DNA of 64,000 nt, from NCBI GenBank assembly GCA_964106915.2, contig OZ066914.1, one strand, 5' to 3'. The stretch's first letter is position 1. Each line of letters opens with the position of its first letter. The notes beneath the pieces are model-generated. The model made no database searches and was not told the DNA's origin. It saw only the letters and a program-made list of their open reading frames with translations. Positions 47,801 to 55,744 of the stretch are shown here, piece by piece. A program made the translations under genes and the position numbers. This stretch comes from Podarcis gaigeae. Taxonomy: Eukaryota.

Positions 47801-50800
47801 AAGGCAGAGTTGATGGTAGACGGAACTGTGGAGGGTCCAGCTGGAGTAGGGTCCTGGTTTCCTTTGCCTGCATCCCTCTGTCTCAGTTTATGACAAAGGG
47901 TTTGTTGCAAATATTAGCCACTACGCCTGAGATCTTCTGAATCTGTCTCTGTTTAAAGCAGTGTTTCGGTTTATTTAAAAGCAATAGTTTACACTCATTT
48001 TGTTTCTTCCCTTCCCTCTGTGTTTTTTGCTGCAGTTCCTGCTAAGATCCACTTGCCTAAAAATCTTGAAGGCATGGGAGCCGTTCACGCTCTCCGTGGT
48101 GAAGTCATCAGCATCAAAATCCCATTCAGTGGGAAGCCTGATCCAGTGATCACATGGCAGAAAGGGCAAGATCTTATTGATACTAATGGACACTACCAAG
48201 TTATCGTGACACGGTCATTCACATCTCTTGTTTTCCCTAACGGTGTGGACAGGAAAGATGCAGGCTTCTACATTGTCTGTGCTAAAAACAGATTTGGCAT
48301 TGATCAGAAAACAGTTGAATTAGATGTCGCTGATGTTCCTGATCCCCCAAGAGGACTGAAAGCAAGCGAGGTTTCAAGGGACTCGGTCAACCTGACATGG
48401 AATGCTCCAGCAAATGATGGCGGAAGCCGAGTCACACACTATACTGTTGAGAAACGCGCTACCACAGCTGAGAGATGGATTCGTGTTGGCCAGGCTCGTG
48501 ACACTCGATACACTGTGATAAACCTATTTGGCAAGACAAGCTATGTATTCCGCGTTATAGCAGAGAATAAATTTGGACAAAGCCAGCCTTCTGAACCTAC
48601 AGATTCTGTAATAACAAAGGAAGATAAGACCAGAACAGTTAATTATGATGAAGAAGTTGATGAGGCCAGAGAAGTCACTACAGCAAAAGCAGCTCACTCT
48701 AATACAAAAGAACTCTATGACAGATATATGATTGCTGAAGAACTTGGGCGCGGACAATTTGGAATTGCCCACAGGTGTGTTGAGATAGTTTCAAAGAAGA
48801 CTTACCTGGCCAAGTTTGTCAAAGTAAAAGGTGCTGATCAAGTGCTCGTAAAGAAAGAAATTTCCATCCTCAACATTGCTAGGCATAGAAATATCTTACA
48901 GCTTCATGAATCATTTGAAAGCCTAGAAGAACTTATCATGATCTCTGAGTTCATATCTGGAGTTGACATCTTTGAAAGACTTAATATTCCTGCATTTGAA
49001 CTTAACGAAAGAGAAATTATAAGCTATGTACGTCAAGTATGTGAAGCACTTGAATTCCTGCACAGTCATAGCATTGGGCACTTTGATATCAGGCCAGAGA
49101 ACATCATCTATTTCACAAGAAGAAGCTCTATAGTTAAAATCATTGAATTTGGTCAGGCAAGGCAGCTGAAACCTGGTGATAATTTCAGACTCCAGTTTAC
49201 TTCCCCTGAATATTATGCGCCTGAAGTCCATCAGCATGATATGGTCAACACAGCCACAGATATGTGGTCACTTGGAACCCTAGTGTATGTACTTCTAAGC
49301 GGCCTGAATCCTTTCATTGCTGAAACAAACCAACAAACAATTGAAAACATCATAAGTGCTGAATACAATTTTGATGAAGAAGCCTTCAAAGATATCAGTA
49401 TTGAGGCCTTGGACTTTGTTGACCGCCTGCTAGTAAAAGAAAGGAGAGCTCGCATGACTGCTACTGAAGCCCTTGAACATGCTTGGCTGAAGCAAAGGAC
49501 AGAGAAAACAAGCACCAAAGTTATCAAAACACTGAGACACAGACGTTATTATCAAACACTGGTGAAGAAGGAATGGAACACAGTTGTGTCAGCGGCCCGT
49601 GTTGCATGGGGTGGTGCAGTCAGATCTCAGAAGGCCGTTACAGTTGCTAAAGTTAAAGTGGCATCAATTGACATTGGACCCATTACTGGGCAGATAATGC
49701 ATGCTGTTGGAGAAGAAGGTGGGCATGCCAAGTATGTCTGCAAGATTGAAAACTATGATTCATCCACAGAAGTAACCTGGTACTTTGGAGTCAGACAATT
49801 GGAGAACAGTGAAAAACATGAGATCAGCTACCATGAAGGAGTGGCTACAATGTATGTCAAAGACATTGCTAAATCAGATGACGGTACCTACAGGTGTAAA
49901 GTTACAAATGACTATGGTGAAGACAGTTCCTACGCAGAACTGTTTGTTAAAGGTGTGAGAGAAGTTTCTGACTTTTACAGACGCAGAACTGTCAGGAGAG
50001 TGAAGCGCCGAGTAGATACCTTGAGACTTTTGGAGAAGCCACCAGAATTTACGCTGCCTTTATACAACCGTACTGCCTATGTTGGTGAAAATGTCAGGTT
50101 TGGAGTAACAATAACAGTTCACCCAGAACCTCGTGTAACGTGGTTCAGATCGGGCCAGAAGATCAAGCCTGGAGATGATGACAGGAAGTATACCTTTGAA
50201 ACTGATAAGGGTCTTTATCAGCTTCTCATCCATAATGTCAATGAAGATGATGATGCTGAATATACTGTGCTAGCTCGCAACAAATACGGCGAGGACAGCT
50301 GCAAAGCTAAGTTAACCGTTGTTCAGCATGCTCCTCCAGAGGCTACCACGATGAGACCCATGTTCAAAAGACTACTGGCAAATGCAGAATGCCAAGAAGG
50401 CCAGAGTATCTGCTTTGAGATAAGAGTATCTGGAATACCAAAACCAGCACTAAAATGGGAAAAGGATGGACAGCCCTTATCAGCTAGTCCAAATATTGAA
50501 ATTGTACATGAAGGGTTGGATTACTATGCTTTGCATATCAGGGATACTTTACCAGAAGACAGTGGTTATTACAGAGTTACTGCGACAAACAGTGCTGGAT
50601 CAACAAGTTGCCAGGCTTACTTGAAGGTAGAGCGCTCAAAATATATCAAGCGTCAATACAAGAGTGAAGAAGAGCGGCAAAAGCATGTACAGAAGAGCAT
50701 TGACAAGACAGTGAGAATGGCAGAAATCCTTTCTAGAACAGAATCTGTCCCACTGACAGATGTAGCACAGGAAGCTCTCAGACAAGCTGCTATCCTGTAT

Positions 50801-53800
50801 AAACCAGCTGTAAGCACCAAGACTGTCAAAGGTGAATTTGAACTTAAAAAGGAAGAAATTAAAGAAGAAAAGAGACTTCGGATGCCTTATGAGATCCCAG
50901 AGCCTCGCAGACATGCAGCCGCTACTCTGGAAGAAGATCAGAACATCAAACTGTTTGTGCCTATGTCAGACATGAAGTGGTACAAGAAGCTGAGAGACCA
51001 ATATGAAATGCCAGGGAAACTTGATAGAATTGTTCAGAAGCGACCAAAGCGCATTCGCCTTTCCAGATGGGAACAGTTCTATGTGATGCCACTGCCACGC
51101 ATTACTGATCAGTATAAACCTAAGTGGCGGATACCCAAATTGTCACAAGATGATCTCGAGACCGTCAGGCCAGCACGCCGGCGTACACCATCTCCTGATT
51201 ATGAATTTTATTACCGACCAAGAAGACGCTCACTTAGTGACCTGTCAGATGAAGAACTGCTGCTACCGGTTGATGATTATTTAGCCATGAAGAGAACTGA
51301 AGAAGAAAGACTGCGACTTGAAGAAGAACTGGAGCTGGGCTTTTCTGCATCACCTCCAAGCAGAAGCCCTCCACGCTTTGAACTGTCTTCTCTCCATTAC
51401 ACGGCAGCAGATGCTCATATTGCCACAGAGGAATCTAGGCAAAGAGAGCTGAGGTATGGCACTTATCACATACCCTCTAAAGAAGATACCGCTGCATCTT
51501 ATGCACAGCTCCGGCAACGCCATGACAGAGCAATTTATAGACCACCAAAACAAAAACAGAGAATAATGTCCGAGAAAGAGGATGAAGAGCTGCTGCGACC
51601 AGTAAAAACAACCCGCCGGCTTGCTGAATACAAGAGTGAGCTTGAGTATATGTCACAAGAAGAAAAGAGCCGACTGAGAAGAAGGAGAGAGAGAGAAATA
51701 ACTGAGGTCAGATCAGAAGAGGAAGAGGAAGAAATAGAAATGGTGAGGCACGTTCACCGGGAATTTTCTCCTCCCTCAAGATTACTAGGAAGAAGGCGCT
51801 CTCTTTCTCCAACTTACATTGAATTAATGCGTCCTGTGTCTGAATTAATTCGACCCCGATCACACCCTGTGGAAGAAACAGAGAGAAGATCTCCCACACC
51901 AGAGAGAACACGGCCACGCTCACCAAGCCCAGTGTCCAGCGAGAGATCTCTCTCACGATTTGAAAGGACAGCAAGATTTGATATATTTTCCAGGTATGAA
52001 TCCATGAAAGCTGCTTTGAAAACCCAAAAAACAATGGAACGGAAATATGAAGTTCTGACTCAAGAACCTTTCACTCTGGATCATGCCCCACGCATAACTC
52101 TAAGAATGCGCTCACATCGTGTACCGTGTAACACCAACACCAGATTCATTTTGAATGTCCAGTCCAAACCAACTGCTGAAGTGAAATGGTACCACAATGG
52201 TGTTGAAATTCAGGAAAGCCATAAGATTCATTTCACTAATACTAGTGGCGTATTAACCTTGGAGATTCTTGATTGCCATATTGATGATAGTGGTACATAC
52301 CGTGCTGTGTGCACAAATTATAAAGGAGAATGTTCTGACTATGCAACATTAGATGTTACAGGAGGAGACTACACTACATATACCTCCCAGCGAAGAGATG
52401 AGGAAGTACCAAGAACTATTGTACCAGACTTGACAAGGACTGCAGCATATGCAATCTCCTCATTTAAGAAAGTCTCTGAAACAGAAGCAAGTTCTTCGAT
52501 AAGAGCAAGCAAATCAGAACTGACAGAAACCAGAGAATCGCTATCATCGTACGAGCACCATGCTTCTGCTGAAATGAGAGTCAGTACTTCAGAGGAAAAA
52601 TCATTGGAAGAAAGAGCTGTTCATCGGAAGTTTAAGACCACTCTGCCTGCAACAATATTAACAAAGCCACGGTCAATCACTGTCTCTGAAGGGGAGACTG
52701 CAAGATTTTCTTGTGACATTGATGGTGAACCAACACCAACTGTAACATGGATCCGTGCAAGTCAAGCTATTGTTTCTTCTGGACGCTTCCAAGTAACACG
52801 TACGCAGTATAAATCTACCTTTGAAATTTCATCTGTCCAGACCTCAGATGAAGGAAGTTACACTGTTGTGGTAGAAAATTCTGAAGGAAGACAGGAAGCC
52901 CACTTTAGTTTGACTGTACAAAGGAAAAGGGTCCCAGAAAAAGCAATTACATCACCTCCAAGGGTCAAATCTCCTGAGCCTCATGTTAAGTCCCCAGACA
53001 GAGTAAAATCTCCCAAGCGAGTGAAATCCCCCGAACCATCTCCTGCCCACTCTAAAGCCAAGTCAACACCTGCAGGTAAAACAACACCATCAGAGAAAGC
53101 AGACTTGCCTGTTGCTGTTCCCCCTAAGATAAAACAACAGCTGAAAGTGGAAGCTTCTGGGGACAAAGCAAAATTCTTCTGTTCAGTTGAAAGCAGTGTT
53201 CTGAGTGTCCGAGAAGTAGCCTGGTACAAAGATGGCAAGAAACTAAAAGAGGACGATCATTTCAAATTTCATTATGCAGCTGATGGAACATATGAACTTA
53301 AAATCCATAACCTCAAGGAATCTGATCAAGGTGAATATACATGTGAGATTGTTGGGGAAGGTGGCGCCTCCAAAACCAACTTTCAGTTTGTTGGCCAAGC
53401 TTTTAAAAGTATTCATTCTCAGGTGTCAAGCTTAAGCAAAACTCAAAAATCAGTTCAGAAAGAGTCTGAAATACATGAGGTATCTGCCCAGAAAAAATCT
53501 GCAATGACTTCTCAAGAAAAGACAGTGGTTGAAGAAGAATATGTTAAAAAGTCTCTTGTGTCTGATGAAGCTAAAACATCTTACACAGAAGTTAAATCTA
53601 CTACCACTAAAATGACTGTGTCTGAAGGTCAAAAATCTACCCTTAAAGCCAGTATTGCTGGTGCTTCTAATGTAAAATGGTTACTGAATGGAATAGAGCT
53701 AACTAACTCTGAAGATTATAGATATGGTGTATCAGGAAGTGATCATACTCTAACTATCCAAAAAGTGACCCAGAAAGATGAAGGAATACTTACCTGTGAA

Positions 53801-54838
53801 GGAAAGACTGAACAGGGTATCATCAAATGTCACTTTGAAATGAGTCTTTCAAAAGATCAATCAAATGCCCCAGCCTTTATCATACAACCGAAATCTCAAA
53901 ACATCAACGAAGGACAAGATGTGTTGCTTACCTGTGAAGTTTCTGGAGATCCTTCCCCTGAAATCCACTGGTTTAAAGATAACCAGCCAGTAAGTAATTA
54001 CTTATGTCAGCCTTGAAATTAAATGATCCATTCTTAACCCTGAGTATAATTTGATCTTAACAAAGTATCTCTTTCATCATCAGATTGCTCTCTCATCCAA
54101 CATCCGAGTAAATCGCTCCAAGAATGTTTATTCTCTTGCAATCCAAAATGCTTTAGTGAGTGATAGTGGAAAATACACAGTCAAAGCGAAAAACTTCCAT
54201 GGGCAGTGTTCTGCAACAGCATCTCTGACCGTCCTTCGTAAGTTTTTTTAAAGTCTTATCTTAATATGAGTAGGGCTTCTACGATATGGCAAAAGCAGTT
54301 GATTGTTTTGATTCTTTAACGAGCTGTTAGTTTCATTACTGAACCTAAAATGCAATATACATTATAATTACAAAATACTGAATTTAAAATATATGTACTT
54401 ATATGTTTCTCACCCGCTCAGTGTTACCAGAAGGCTTTGAACATCTTGCTATTAACCCGTTGGTTCCAGTGATCACTATTTAATAAACTATCAGAATAAT
54501 TAACGCCCAAAGGGTTAGTTCTCTGAATTTTTTTCTTAGTTTCATTAAACGTCTCAGATACAAACTTGCTGCATTTTAAAATCATCTGGATACCAGGAGC
54601 CAACGGGTTGCTCTATGTTTTGCTGTTGATGTATGTATGTGCTTGTGTTTAAGGAAAACGGCAGTGTTTTTTTTTTATGGTGGTGTAGTAGTTTTAATGG
54701 CAGACTACCTGCCGAGTTATGTAAAATAAGAAGGGGAAACAAAGCACCATCCAAAGGGGCTGTATCTTTTAAAAAGAAGAAGAAGAAGTTTCAACGGGAT
54801 TACATGTTGCTTCTCAACAGCATGCATATTAATTTGAA

Positions 54839-54876
<38 letters not shown>

Positions 54877-55744
54877 TCCATGATTAGGAGCATTATTACA
54901 ATGAAATTCTGTTTTCCTTAAACAGCAAGCCAGTCTCTTTCTCCATCCATAAAGTATATATATTTAAGTCACATGGCTTACCAGTCAACGTGATGTCATT
55001 GGTTTTTCCGTTCTATGTTTGCTGTTGTCCACAGCTCTAATTGAAGAACCTCCAAAAGAGGTAGTGTTGAGAACAAGTGGTGATGCAAGCATGCAGGAAA
55101 GTTTCTCTTCGCAGTCATTTCAAATGTCCGCTTCTAAACAAGAAGCTTCGTTCAGCAGTAGCAGCATGAGTGAGATGAAATTTGCAAGCATGTCTGCCAA
55201 AAGCATGTCCTCCATGCAAGAATCCTTTGTAGAGATGAGTACCAGCAGTATAATGGGGAAATCTAGTCTGACCCAACTGGAGAGTTCTTCTAGTAGAATG
55301 ATTAAATCTGGTATGAGAGGTGAGCAATACTTATTATACGTAGAGTTAGAAAAACACCACAATATCCTAGATATGCAGAATTAGTCATTATAGTAGAACT
55401 TCAGTTTCCGCTAAGAACTAACTTGATTTCCCCCCCTCCCATTTTGCAAAGGAATACCACCCAAAATTGAAGCTCTTCCAAACGATATCTCCATTGAGGA
55501 AGGAAAGGTTCTCACCATATCCTGTGCCTTCACTGGTGAACCTACTCCTGACATAACATGGTCCTGCAAAGGGAAAAGCATTTCTAGTCAAGGTGGTAGA
55601 TTCCACGTTGAAACCAGTGAAGACTTAACCACTCTTATCATCATGGATGTTCAAAAGGACGACGGGGGACTTTATACACTGAATTTAGGAAATGATTTTG
55701 GCACTGACTCTGCCACTGTGAATATTAACATTCGATCAATTTAA
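108..55744 (+). CDS. TTN: Titin (connectin), 3' part of gene: 51 coding exons, A-band C-zone to M10; 5' part lies upstream of the window
   Basis: Ig/Fn3 11-domain super-repeats, titin kinase ([11 protein letters not shown]), KSP repeats, is7 and terminal M10 (...[11 protein letters not shown]). Exons join in frame at GT-AG sites. Confidence 0.99.
734..1033 (+). CDS. TTN: TTN exon, Fn3 (A49)
   Basis: ttttag|ATC...ATG|gtaagg; 300 nt. Confidence 0.93.
1149..1436 (+). CDS. TTN: TTN exon, Ig (A50)
   Basis: ctgcag|TAC...TAG|gtaggc; 288 nt. Confidence 0.92.
1530..1826 (+). CDS. TTN: TTN exon, Fn3 (A51)
   Basis: tcccag|ACA...ATG|gtaagc; 297 nt. Confidence 0.93.
1917..2219 (+). CDS. TTN: TTN exon, Fn3 (A52)
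   Basis: ttatag|ATG...AGT|gtaagt; 303 nt. Confidence 0.93.
2327..2632 (+). CDS. TTN: TTN exon, Fn3 (A53)
   Basis: tctcag|ATC...TAA|gtaagt; 306 nt. Confidence 0.93.
3413..3700 (+). CDS. TTN: TTN exon, Ig (A54, first domain of super-repeat C2)
   Basis: atgcag|TTC...TTG|gtaagt; 288 nt; ELDAELRK motif. Confidence 0.93.
3803..4093 (+). CDS. TTN: TTN exon, Fn3 (A55)
   Basis: gtacag|ATA...CTG|gtgaga; 291 nt. Confidence 0.93.
4201..4488 (+). CDS. TTN: TTN exon, Fn3 (A56)
   Basis: tgctag|AAA...TAG|gtgagt; 288 nt. Confidence 0.92.
4856..5218 (-). mobile_element. L2-type LINE 3' fragment with simple-repeat tail
   Basis: Minus-strand peptide [27 protein letters not shown]...RTLRSS is typical of the L2 ORF2 C-terminus; related copies at 26.0, 39.1, 58.8 and 62.7 kb. 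Confidence 0.8.
5251..5841 (+). CDS. TTN: TTN exon, Ig+Fn3 (A57-A58)
   Basis: ttccag|TGG...TTG|gtaagc; 591 nt. Confidence 0.93.
5928..6032 (+). CDS. TTN: TTN small exon, N-terminal third of Fn3 (A59); absent from the ORF track
   Basis: ttctag|ATG...CAG|gtattt; 105 nt encoding (D)[34 protein letters not shown]. Confidence 0.92.
6580..6777 (+). CDS. TTN: TTN exon, C-terminal part of Fn3 (A59)
   Basis: ttgtag|GTT...TTG|gtaagc; 198 nt (105+198=303, one domain). Confidence 0.92.
6868..7164 (+). CDS. TTN: TTN exon, Fn3 (A60)
   Basis: tttcag|ATC...ATG|gtacgt; 297 nt. Confidence 0.93.
7226..7577 (+). mobile_element. Sauria SINE, full length, 15-bp target-site duplication
   Basis: tRNA-derived head with B box GGTTCGAATCC (7291-7301), (ACCTTT)n-type tail, TSD TATCTTCTTTCCTAA at 7211-7225 and 7578-7592; second copy at 58071. 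Confidence 0.92.
7614..8201 (+). CDS. TTN: TTN exon, Ig+Fn3 (A61-A62)
   Basis: ttacag|AGG...TTG|gtaagc; 588 nt. Confidence 0.93.
8295..8597 (+). CDS. TTN: TTN exon, Fn3 (A63)
   Basis: ttttag|GGC...CAT|gttagt; 303 nt. Confidence 0.92.
8701..25803 (+). CDS. TTN: TTN giant A-band exon, 17,103 nt, 58 domains (A64-A121); orthologue of human exon 326
   Basis: ttatag|ATC...CAG|gtttgt; continuous ORF; super-repeat period of about 3,246 nt (first-Ig motif near 9018, 12270, 15516, 18758, 22008, 25245). Confidence 0.97.
26026..26151 (+). mobile_element. L2-type LINE extreme 3' fragment with (TATTAG)n tail
   Basis: Homologous to the reverse complement of 4915-4992 (ccctatttaggga...taatgtttaat...cagagtggctg). 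Confidence 0.6.
26286..26582 (+). CDS. TTN: TTN exon, Fn3 (A122)
   Basis: tttcag|AAA...TAG|gtatgt; 297 nt. Confidence 0.93.
26932..27519 (+). CDS. TTN: TTN exon, Ig+Fn3 (A123-A124)
   Basis: tttcag|AAT...ACA|gtaagt; 588 nt. Confidence 0.93.
27628..27930 (+). CDS. TTN: TTN exon, Fn3 (A125)
   Basis: atttag|CAC...GTG|gtatgt; 303 nt. Confidence 0.93.
28059..28355 (+). CDS. TTN: TTN exon, Fn3 (A126)
   Basis: ctgcag|AGC...ATG|gtaaga; 297 nt. Confidence 0.93.
28608..28895 (+). CDS. TTN: TTN exon, Ig (A127)
   Basis: attaag|GTG...TTG|gtatgt; 288 nt; AAG acceptor. Confidence 0.9.
28997..29296 (+). CDS. TTN: TTN exon, Fn3 (A128)
   Basis: aaacag|ATA...TTG|gtaagt; 300 nt. Confidence 0.92.
29401..29703 (+). 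CDS. TTN: TTN exon, Fn3 (A129)
   Basis: atgcag|TTA...TAG|gtaaga; 303 nt. Confidence 0.92.
29851..30156 (+). CDS. TTN: TTN exon, Fn3 (A130)
   Basis: ttgcag|AAA...TTG|gtatgt; 306 nt. Confidence 0.93.
30264..32030 (+). CDS. TTN: TTN exon, Ig-Fn-Fn-Ig-Fn-Fn (A131-A136)
   Basis: ttgcag|AGG...TAG|gtaagt; 1,767 nt. Confidence 0.94.
32129..32425 (+). CDS. TTN: TTN exon, Fn3 (A137)
   Basis: tttcag|ATC...CTG|gtaagc; 297 nt. Confidence 0.93.
32813..32861. repeat. (TG)n microsatellite, imperfect
   Basis: Direct reading. Confidence 0.95.
33082..33217. mobile_element. Palindromic non-autonomous hAT-type DNA transposon (MITE), 136 bp
   Basis: About 60-bp inverted arms (CAGACTTCCTCATCCT... / ...AGGTTGAGGAAGCCTG); perfect 8-bp TSD CACTTGAG at 33074-33081 and 33218-33225. 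Confidence 0.9.
33554..33841 (+). CDS. TTN: TTN exon, Ig (A138)
   Basis: ctttag|TTG...ACG|gtaact; 288 nt. Confidence 0.92.
33944..34243 (+). CDS. TTN: TTN exon, Fn3 (A139)
   Basis: ttacag|ATA...ATA|gtaagt; 300 nt. Confidence 0.91.
34333..36399 (+). CDS. TTN: TTN exon, 7 domains (A140-A146)
   Basis: ttacag|CTG...TTG|gtaagt; 2,067 nt. Confidence 0.94.
36517..36819 (+). CDS. TTN: TTN exon, Fn3 (A147)
   Basis: catcag|TCC...TTG|gtaagt; 303 nt. Confidence 0.93.
36909..37214 (+). CDS. TTN: TTN exon, Fn3 (A148)
   Basis: ttacag|ATC...ACT|gtaaga; 306 nt. Confidence 0.92.
37315..37605 (+). CDS. TTN: TTN exon, Ig (A149)
   Basis: tcatag|CAC...TTG|gtgagt; 291 nt. Confidence 0.93.
37726..38025 (+). CDS. 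TTN: TTN exon, Fn3 (A150, the human HMERF hotspot domain)
   Basis: caatag|ATT...TCA|gtaagt; 300 nt; DSPGPC...KCTLAW...NKYGPG. Confidence 0.92.
38149..38454 (+). CDS. TTN: TTN exon, Fn3 (A151)
   Basis: ttacag|CTA...CAT|gtaagt; 306 nt. Confidence 0.93.
38625..38962 (-). mobile_element. CR1 LINE 3' fragment
   Basis: Plus strand begins tagaatgatagaatcatagaa, the complement of the CR1 (ATTCTRTG)n terminal repeat, followed by the typical ggtcatctagtcca segment. Confidence 0.75.
39072..39273 (-). mobile_element. L2-type LINE 3' fragment
   Basis: Clear similarity to 4865-5062 (taccccgccc...cactctgggcggcttccaac...ctttgacatctg). Confidence 0.8.
39558..39863 (+). CDS. TTN: TTN exon, Fn3 (A152)
   Basis: ccaaag|ATA...TAG|gtaatg; 306 nt; AAG acceptor. 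Confidence 0.9.
39973..40254 (+). CDS. TTN: TTN exon, Ig (A153, start of super-repeat C11)
   Basis: ctatag|AAA...ATG|gtaagt; 282 nt. Confidence 0.92.
40449..41042 (+). CDS. TTN: TTN exon, 2 Fn3 (A154-A155)
   Basis: ccacag|ATA...AAG|gtaaga; 594 nt. Confidence 0.92.
41145..41432 (+). CDS. TTN: TTN exon, Ig (A156)
   Basis: ttttag|TTC...TGG|gtaaga; 288 nt. Confidence 0.9.
41554..41853 (+). CDS. TTN: TTN exon, Fn3 (A157)
   Basis: tcacag|ACA...TTA|gtaagt; 300 nt. Confidence 0.93.
42073..42375 (+). CDS. TTN: TTN exon, Fn3 (A158)
   Basis: ttgtag|GTG...TTG|gtaaat; 303 nt. Confidence 0.93.
42527..42829 (+). CDS. TTN: TTN exon, Fn3 (A159)
   Basis: tttcag|CTC...TTG|gtaaga; 303 nt. Confidence 0.93.
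42921..43505 (+). CDS. TTN: TTN exon, Ig+Fn3 (A160-A161)
   Basis: tcccag|AAA...TGA|gtaagt; 585 nt. Confidence 0.93.
43605..43838 (-). mobile_element. Degraded tRNA-derived (MIR/CORE-like) SINE interrupted by a short palindromic element (about 43675-43760)
   Basis: aacctgtgaggtagg...gagagagaatgactgcccaa...gtgagttcatgactga...tccaatactcttaactcctatgcca resembles the antisense of an amniote CORE-SINE; recognised from memory only. Confidence 0.5.
43876..44181 (+). CDS. TTN: TTN exon, Fn3 (A162)
   Basis: caacag|ATC...TTG|gtacgt; 306 nt. Confidence 0.93.
44280..44579 (+). CDS. TTN: TTN exon, Fn3 (A163); correct frame absent from the ORF track
   Basis: ttacag|ACA...CAT|gtacgt; 300 nt; [30 protein letters not shown]... 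Confidence 0.92.
44923..45498 (+). CDS. TTN: TTN exon, 2 Ig (A164-A165, P-zone)
   Basis: atatag|CTG...AAG|gtatgt; 576 nt. Confidence 0.93.
45582..45887 (+). CDS. TTN: TTN exon, Fn3 (A166)
   Basis: ttgtag|ATA...TTG|gtaagt; 306 nt. Confidence 0.93.
45982..46575 (+). CDS. TTN: TTN exon, Fn3+Ig (A167-A168)
   Basis: ttacag|AAA...AAG|gtaagt; 594 nt. Confidence 0.93.
48036..53989 (+). CDS. TTN: TTN fused M-line exon (Mex1+Mex3): A169, A170, titin kinase, M1-M6 with is1-is4, M8, first half of M9
   Basis: ctgcag|TTC...CCA|gtaagt; 5,954 nt open frame, phase 1-0. Confidence 0.95.
48725..49489 (+). other. TTN: Titin kinase catalytic core (CaMK/MLCK family, pseudokinase-type motifs)
   Basis: GRGQFG, TYLAK (K at 48812), HFDIRPEN (49079), EFG in place of DFG (49145), PEYYAPE, DMWSLG. 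Confidence 0.97.
52964..53032 (+). repeat. TTN: Four VKSP repeats of titin is4
   Basis: [23 protein letters not shown]. Confidence 0.93.
54084..54237 (+). CDS. TTN: TTN exon Mex4, second half of Ig M9
   Basis: catcag|ATT...TTC|gtaagt; 154 nt, phase 0-1. Confidence 0.94.
54840..54875. repeat. (TTA)n microsatellite
   Basis: Direct reading. Confidence 0.95.
55035..55319 (+). CDS. TTN: TTN exon Mex5 (is7, Ser/Met-rich; alternatively spliced and calpain-3-binding in mammals)
   Basis: ccacag|CTC...GAG|gtgagc; 285 nt; [20 protein letters not shown]... Confidence 0.93.
55452..55744 (+). CDS. TTN: TTN terminal exon Mex6, Ig M10 and stop; absent from the ORF track
   Basis: gcaaag|GAATA; [31 protein letters not shown]...[14 protein letters not shown]. 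Confidence 0.96.

What the first reader, a model, noticed from the sequence alone, without database searches (positions are those of the whole stretch)
53380..53620. Titin lacking Ig domain M7: Mex2 and two introns are absent, Mex1 is fused in frame to Mex3
Seen: after M6 (...[34 protein letters not shown]) the frame runs with no intron straight into [12 protein letters not shown]... and M8 ([19 protein letters not shown]). Only about 65-70 low-complexity residues separate M6 from M8. Only four exons follow A168. Known (recalled): mammals have six M-line exons, with M7 (..KPVIVTGLQD..WTKDGK | AITQGGKY..CKLTIK) split over Mex1/Mex2 and a longer is6 in Mex3. No M7-like sequence is visible anywhere in the window. 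Upstream, the count from giant exon to Mex1 (32 steps) matches human 326 to 358, so this is the only exon-count difference I can see from the giant exon onward. Inference: a genomic in-frame deletion with a junction near 53461 (or a gain in mammals) shortens titin's M-band crossing segment by roughly 170 aa. That would move the is7/M10 sites for calpain-3 and obscurin closer to the myomesin site on M4. I do not know whether this has been reported for reptiles.
Basis: partly seen in the sequence, partly recalled or inferred. Interest (0 to 1): 0.85.

Follow-up and report, generated by a model that had tools for sequence, protein, structure and literature searches.

The report
Ancient reptile-bird loss of titin M7
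This lizard's giant muscle protein titin really lacks one small building block near its end, but geckos, turtles, birds and frogs lack it too, so it is an old and apparently harmless deletion rather than a peculiarity of this genome.

Summary
In detail: one 5,954-nt exon (48036-53989) runs from Mex1 into Mex3, with no M7, no Mex2 and the junction at 53461/53462. It is not lizard-specific. A gecko, three more squamate contigs, a turtle gene model and birds share the junction and a 75-76 aa spacer, which also makes assembly collapse very unlikely. It is a loss, not a mammalian gain: sturgeon, Alaska blackfish and hagfish have M7, and blackfish and fin whale share a 157-nt Mex2 with identical intron phases. 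Against sturgeon 104 aa are gone; the ~170 aa gap to mammals includes mammal-specific linker expansion. M7 was also lost separately in frogs, an unnamed non-tetrapod and teleost paralogues. In the published immuno-EM map M7 lies beyond the M-band crossing, in a slack 16-nm stretch, so the shift of M8-M10 is probably small. Fish titins missing M7-M9 are published (PMC6922384). I recall, but could not retrieve, a 1996 chicken cDNA paper reporting 168 aa and one Ig domain missing; bird versus primate spacers differ by exactly 168 here. No earlier scan note covers this feature.

The parts
48036..53989 (+). Fused exon Mex1+Mex3 of TTN (end of A band, kinase, M1-M6, hybrid linker, M8, first half of M9), 5,954 nt
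   Evidence: Open frame and AG/GT ends
52646..52921 (+). Ig domain M5
   Evidence: Best PDB match titin M5 1NCT, E 8e-41; domain tree
52922..53119 (+). is4 linker with KSP repeats
   Evidence: Translation
53120..53395 (+). Ig domain M6 (not M7)
   Evidence: Groups with mammal, sturgeon, frog and bird M6 at 100/100; alignment score 364 to hamster M6 versus 72 to hamster M7
53396..53461 (+). Remnant of is5 (about 22 codons, ending SVQK)
   Evidence: Aligns without gaps to the first 21 residues of sturgeon is5; score 64 to primate is5, 0 of 500 shuffles reach it
53461..53462 (+). Deletion junction K|E: the end of is5, M7, Mex2, two introns and the first 2-4 codons of Mex3 are missing here
   Evidence: Alignments to sturgeon and primate linkers and to whale DNA
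53462..53605 (+). is6 linker from Mex3, single-copy ancestral form
   Evidence: Aligns without gaps to sturgeon is6 from its residue 6 on
53606..53848 (+). Ig domain M8
   Evidence: Domain tree, M8 clade 99/95
54084..54237 (+). Mex4, second half of M9 (154 nt)
55035..55319 (+). Mex5, is7 (285 nt)
55452..55744 (+). Mex6, M10 and stop codon

Best explanation
Ordinary squamate titin carrying a deletion fixed in the common ancestor of lizards, turtles and birds. Ancestral bony vertebrates had M5-M6-M7-M8-M9-M10, with M7 split over Mex1 and a 157-nt Mex2 (shown). In the sauropsid stem the stretch from is5 (after SVQK) to the start of Mex3 was removed in frame: about 104 codons, Mex2 and two introns (extent and shared junction shown; timing inferred). 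The likeliest route is one DNA deletion between two similar Lys/Thr/Glu-rich stretches flanking M7 (inferred, about 0.65). It was tolerated because M7 is a spacer: the papers read here give it no ligand, and it sits in a slack stretch past the M1 crossing, so M8-M10 and their obscurin and calpain-3 sites can stay near their usual place (inferred, about 0.7). The same tolerance would explain separate losses in frogs, an unnamed non-tetrapod and teleost paralogues.
For: Same 75-76 aa spacer without M7 in the window, three Logan squamate contigs, Sphaerodactylus, Chrysemys and five bird sequences; 12 named bird proteins show no M7. DNA across 53100-54000 is colinear with squamate L007 (86%, 3 gap bases) and bird L001 (74%, 9 gap bases). 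M7 is present in Huso (53% to hamster), Dallia, Eptatretus and mammals and forms one clade with an amphioxus domain (88/90). Whale and Dallia share both introns (phase 0, phase 1) and a 157-nt Mex2. The kinase-M3 tree puts the window among squamates (100/99), these with birds (97/93), mammals as their sister (94/94), frogs outside. Frog (58-59 aa) and P0385 (61 aa) spacers have different 3' ends. A spliced frog contig runs M6-M8-M9-is7-M10 without M7 (L006). Geometry from PMC2121001.
Against: Crocodilians, tuatara, salamanders, caecilians, monotremes, marsupials and named coelacanth, lungfish or shark were not sampled. The turtle, sturgeon and hagfish rows are gene models without DNA in hand. 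The M7 clade has moderate support only (88-94 bootstrap, unstarred). After about 300 million years (own knowledge) any DNA microhomology cannot be read. The tolerance argument rests on one immuno-EM study of rat muscle, which also allows a U-turn model.
Confidence: 0.85

Rival explanations
1. Same ancient loss by a splice-led route: a donor inside is5 was first spliced to the Mex3 acceptor, skipping M7, and the skipped DNA was later erased by recombination with a cDNA.
For: The 3' side of the junction is within 2-4 codons of the Mex3 acceptor. One teleost paralogue has a phase-1 donor within one or two codons of this same place in is5 (ORFs ending ...KG|GT). Both introns are gone without trace, and the gene's 3' end is where cDNA-mediated loss is expected (own knowledge).
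Against: The first Mex3 codons (A-V in mammals, A-S-K-A in sturgeon) are missing, so the junction is not at the acceptor. SVQK is also in frog and mammal is5, so it is not the start of Mex3. The three downstream introns are kept.
Confidence: 0.25
2. The loss is functional: it pulls M8-M10, is7, obscurin and calpain-3 sites measurably towards the myomesin site on M4 and alters sauropsid M-band architecture.
For: Maximum contour from M6 to M8 falls from about 66-72 nm in mammals to about 33 nm (arithmetic at 0.38 nm per residue); one 4-nm Ig domain is removed; spacer length is held at 75-76 aa across sauropsids.
Against: Only about 16 nm separates is4 from M8 in rat (PMC2121001), far below either contour. 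Sturgeon has only about 42 nm with M7. Linker length varies freely among mammals (is5 41-54 aa, more in whale). M7 has been lost several times.
Confidence: 0.2
3. M7 is a mammalian gain and the window shows the ancestral state.
For: Frogs, birds, turtles, lizards and P0385 all lack it; zebrafish and salmon ttn.2 lack M7-M9 (PMC6922384).
Against: Sturgeon, blackfish and hagfish have an orthologous M7, and blackfish and whale share both introns and the exon length.
Confidence: 0.02
4. Assembly collapse, or a deletion private to this species or individual.
For: No reads could be laid on the junction.
Against: Independent assemblies of other squamates and a bird are colinear across the junction. 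The frame is kept, there is no N, and the junction 45-mer occurs once in the window.
Confidence: 0.01

Closest known systems
Mammalian TTN M-band region (Mex1-Mex6, exons 358-363; Ig M1-M10), PMC6922384
   Same: Kinase, M1-M6, M8-M10, is2, is4 KSP, is7; last three exons and their phases
   Different: No M7, no Mex2, four M-band exons instead of six; M6-to-M8 spacer 76 aa versus 243-257 aa
Bird titin C-terminus (cluster of P0005; chicken connectin cDNA, Yajima et al. 1996 Zool Sci 13:119, recalled from memory and not held in the library)
   Same: Same fused exon and junction, spacer 75 aa. My recollection of that abstract is 168 aa including one Ig motif missing against human; bird versus primate here is 243 - 75 = 168
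   Different: One more codon in is6 in the window; otherwise only substitutions
Teleost ttn.2 (M7-M9 missing; PMC6922384) and ttn.1 (M6 missing; PMC12854356)
   Same: Loss of whole M-band Ig domains between M5 and M10 in viable vertebrates
   Different: Other domains, other breakpoints, and a second titin gene that keeps the complementary domains
Frog titin (cluster of P0007, with Staurois parvus)
   Same: M6 joined to M8 in one exon, 5' side ending at or near SVQK
   Different: About 17 more residues of is6 missing; must be an independent event if mammals inherited M7

Membership tests
Vertebrate titin (TTN orthologue) | A-band Ig/Fn3 super-repeats followed by titin kinase and M-band Ig domains in order | tested here: met
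   Colinear with hamster titin at 63-93% identity from 27789 to 55741; M5 best PDB hit
Vertebrate titin (TTN orthologue) | Gene tree of kinase to M3 follows the vertebrate tree | tested here: met
   Window among squamates 100/99, with birds 97/93
Ten-Ig, six-exon (mammal and sturgeon type) M-band titin | Ig M7 between M6 and M8, split over Mex1 and Mex2 | tested here: not met
   No M7 orthologue on either strand of the window
Sauropsid nine-Ig M-band titin | M6 joined to M8 in one exon by a 75-76 aa spacer with the junction after QK/EK | tested here: met
Sauropsid nine-Ig M-band titin | M7-less transcript expressed in this species' muscle | not tested
Lineage-specific (lizard-only) deletion | M7 present in birds and turtles | tested here: not met
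   Absent in 12 named bird proteins and in two turtle genera
Mammal-specific exon gain | M7 and its introns absent from all non-mammals | tested here: not met
   Present in Huso, Dallia and Eptatretus; shared introns in Dallia and whale
Precise intron loss | Flanking coding sequence joined without loss of codons | tested here: not met
   104 codons missing against sturgeon
M-band length ruler segment | Removal shifts distal epitopes along the filament | not testable with these tools
   Needs immuno-EM or cryo-ET; PMC2121001 suggests slack

The most novel reading that the evidence does not exclude
The M5-to-M9 part of titin is a recurrent deletion hotspot, with M7 lost at least four or five times (sauropsids, frogs, an unnamed non-tetrapod, both teleost paralogue lines), while mammals alone lengthened the linkers, and these changes measurably reposition the obscurin and calpain-3 end of titin in the M-band. 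I found no paper that states this pattern. Recurrent loss is well supported here (about 0.8); a structural consequence is not. The probability given is for both together.
Probability: 0.15. Interest if true: 0.55.

Novelty: new member of a known kind. Interest (0 to 1): 0.3.

Why it matters
It corrects the usual picture of ten M-band Ig domains in higher vertebrates: in every bird, turtle, squamate and frog sequence examined there are nine. It is a natural experiment suggesting M7 is dispensable, which bears on reading in-frame or missense variants in human M7 and on placing chicken or frog M-band data on mammalian maps. It also gives a ready test of whether this segment acts as a ruler. It does not reveal a new mechanism, and the bird case was probably noted in 1996.

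Tried and rejected
My first reading, a mammalian gain (note), was dropped when hagfish, sturgeon and blackfish M7 appeared. No contig was available for the sturgeon (too long), hagfish, hamster or Eleginops proteins. P0385 could not be named: two accession searches gave nothing relevant. Yajima 1996, Granzier 2007 and Lindstedt and Nishikawa 2017 are not held. Literature searches found no report for reptiles. The elephant shark paper says only that the domain structure is almost identical to human. I did not search metagenome contigs with M7, to avoid pulling human contigs. Human PDB chains P0076-P0078, listed unasked, were not used as evidence. The unnamed mammal protein P0099 may be human or another primate: it was in the local BLAST tables and the tree before I noticed, I fetched no DNA for it, looked no further, and nothing depends on it. 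The spliced model was translated locally only and not sent to a search. The hagfish model and P0270 lack M6 but are incomplete gene models, so I drew nothing from that. The two nearby scan notes concern other features.

Full report
Observation. The window is the 3' third of a TTN gene on the + strand and has no N. A stop-free frame spans 47957-54013. The exon inside it is 48036-53989 (5,954 nt, AG/GT). Three exons follow, 54084-54237, 55035-55319 and 55452-55744, and the four give one open frame ending at the titin stop. The exon holds the kinase, M1-M6, a linker of about 70 residues, M8 and half of M9. M5 is confirmed by its PDB match. A domain tree puts the Ig at 53120-53395 with M6 of hamster, sturgeon, frog and bird at 100/100. 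Four M7 queries find no orthologue on either strand: best hits are at most 41% identical and fall on other Ig domains, while true M7 halves in whale give 51-85%.

Not lizard-specific, not an artefact. A protein search returned genomic ORFs with the same fusion from three squamate contigs, the gecko Sphaerodactylus, a bird cluster and frog contigs. Twelve named bird proteins and turtle models (Chrysemys, Gopherus) also go from M6 to M8. Counted from the end of M6 to the GQ motif of M8, the spacer is 76 aa in the window, 75-76 in other squamates, 76 in Chrysemys and 75 in birds, in register throughout. DNA over 53100-54000 is colinear with a squamate contig (L007, 86%) and a bird contig (L001, 74%).

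Polarity. I first read this as a mammalian gain, because frogs lack M7 too. Outgroups overturn that. Sturgeon (Huso huso, P0259) has M5-M6-M7-M8-M9-M10, its M7 53% identical to hamster M7. Alaska blackfish (Dallia, P0393) and hagfish (Eptatretus, P0155) have M7 before M8, and amphioxus has an M7-like domain in the same place. These group with mammalian M7 (88-94 bootstrap, unstarred), and pairwise scores favour M7 over every other domain tested. The strongest evidence is exon structure: in fin whale (L004) and Dallia (L003) M7 is cut after the same K-D-G-K in phase 0, Mex2 is 157 nt in both, and it ends in phase 1. So M7, Mex2 and both introns were in the common ancestor of bony vertebrates. 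A kinase-to-M3 tree places the window among squamates (100/99), these with birds (97/93), mammals as their sister (94/94) and frogs outside. The loss therefore falls on the sauropsid stem, and the frog loss is separate. Crocodilians and tuatara were not sampled; their state is inferred.

Anatomy of the deletion. The first 21 spacer residues align without gaps to sturgeon is5, and residues 22-76 align without gaps to sturgeon is6 from its sixth residue. Against sturgeon 104 aa are missing (180 - 76): 8 of is5, 92 of M7 and about 4 of is6. Against a primate 167 are missing and against hamster 181. The surplus is mammalian: is6 carries an internal duplication (the window's is6 matches both halves, scores 103 and 97, 0 of 500 shuffles; the halves match each other at 60, 1 of 500), and is5 has a short tandem repeat of variable number. 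Frogs (58-59 aa) and the unnamed P0385 lineage (61 aa; outside tetrapods and ray-finned fish) lack more of is6. In teleosts one paralogue keeps M6 and skips to is7, and the other lacks M6 and, in Tetraodon and P0011, M7 as well. That makes four or five separate losses of M7.

Mechanism. Shown: extent, frame, shared junction, ancestral presence. Inferred: one DNA deletion between similar stretches flanking M7 (is5 continues Q-K-T-T-E-S, Mex3 starts V-K-D-T-E-A), favoured because codons are missing on both sides. A splice-then-cDNA route remains possible: the 3' breakpoint is near the Mex3 acceptor and one teleost paralogue has a donor near the 5' breakpoint. Why it was tolerated: in rat immuno-EM the kinase is at 52 nm, is4 at 32 nm, M8 at 48 nm and M9 at 52 nm from M1, and the favoured model has is2 crossing the centre (PMC2121001). 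M7 thus lies past the crossing, in a 16-nm interval that mammals fill with two Ig domains and 150-165 linker residues, far more than needed. M6 plus the window's linker has a maximum contour near 33 nm. The binding partners listed for this region map to is2, is4, M9-M10 and M10, none to M7 (PMC6922384). This part is inference from one study.

What is known. M7-M9 are reported missing in zebrafish and salmon titin (PMC6922384), and M6 in zebrafish Ttn.1 (PMC12854356). From memory, Yajima et al. 1996 (Zool Sci 13:119) reported that chicken connectin lacks 168 aa including one Ig motif relative to human. I could not retrieve it, but bird versus primate here is 243 - 75 = 168. I found no report for reptiles or of the polarity. 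No earlier scan note covers it. One unnamed mammal protein (P0099) may be human; I fetched no DNA for it and nothing rests on it.

Verdict. Real, ancient and shared by every sauropsid examined; a loss, not a gain; probably neutral and probably already noted in chicken. New member of a known kind, interest 0.3. The part worth following is the repeated loss of M6/M7 across vertebrates and the simple test of whether M8-M10 move.

Noticed in passing
P0334, P0415, P0379-P0427 versus P0393, P0297, P0011: The two teleost titin paralogues lost complementary M-band domains: one keeps M6 and goes from a donor in is5 to is7 (no M7-M9); the other lacks M6, and in Tetraodon and P0011 also M7. Partly published (PMC6922384, PMC12854356).
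   Followed up: partly
L005:75-5972 (P0385, P0483, P0484): An unnamed vertebrate outside tetrapods and ray-finned fish has its own Mex1-Mex3 fusion without M7 (61 aa spacer). It could be a cartilaginous fish, coelacanth or lungfish; runs SRR089296 and SRR17051962.
   Followed up: partly
L004:11772-12080: Mammalian is6 contains an internal duplication of roughly 45-50 aa absent from sturgeon and sauropsids.
   Followed up: yes
L004:10347-10620: Mammalian is5 carries a tandem repeat of about 13 aa whose copy number varies (about six in fin whale, one or two in a primate).
   Followed up: partly
window 55035-55319: Mex5 (is7) is 285 nt, with a shorter serine run than gecko or mammals.
   Followed up: no
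window 53528-53545: The window has one more codon in is6 than gecko and birds, shared in length with P0003 and Chrysemys.
   Followed up: no
window 54840-54875: (TTA)n microsatellite in the intron between Mex4 and Mex5.
   Followed up: no
P0155, P0270, P0299: The hagfish model lacks M4 and M6, a frog-like model lacks M6, and a pipefish model lacks M6-M8; these are gene models without DNA in hand and may be annotation errors.
   Followed up: no
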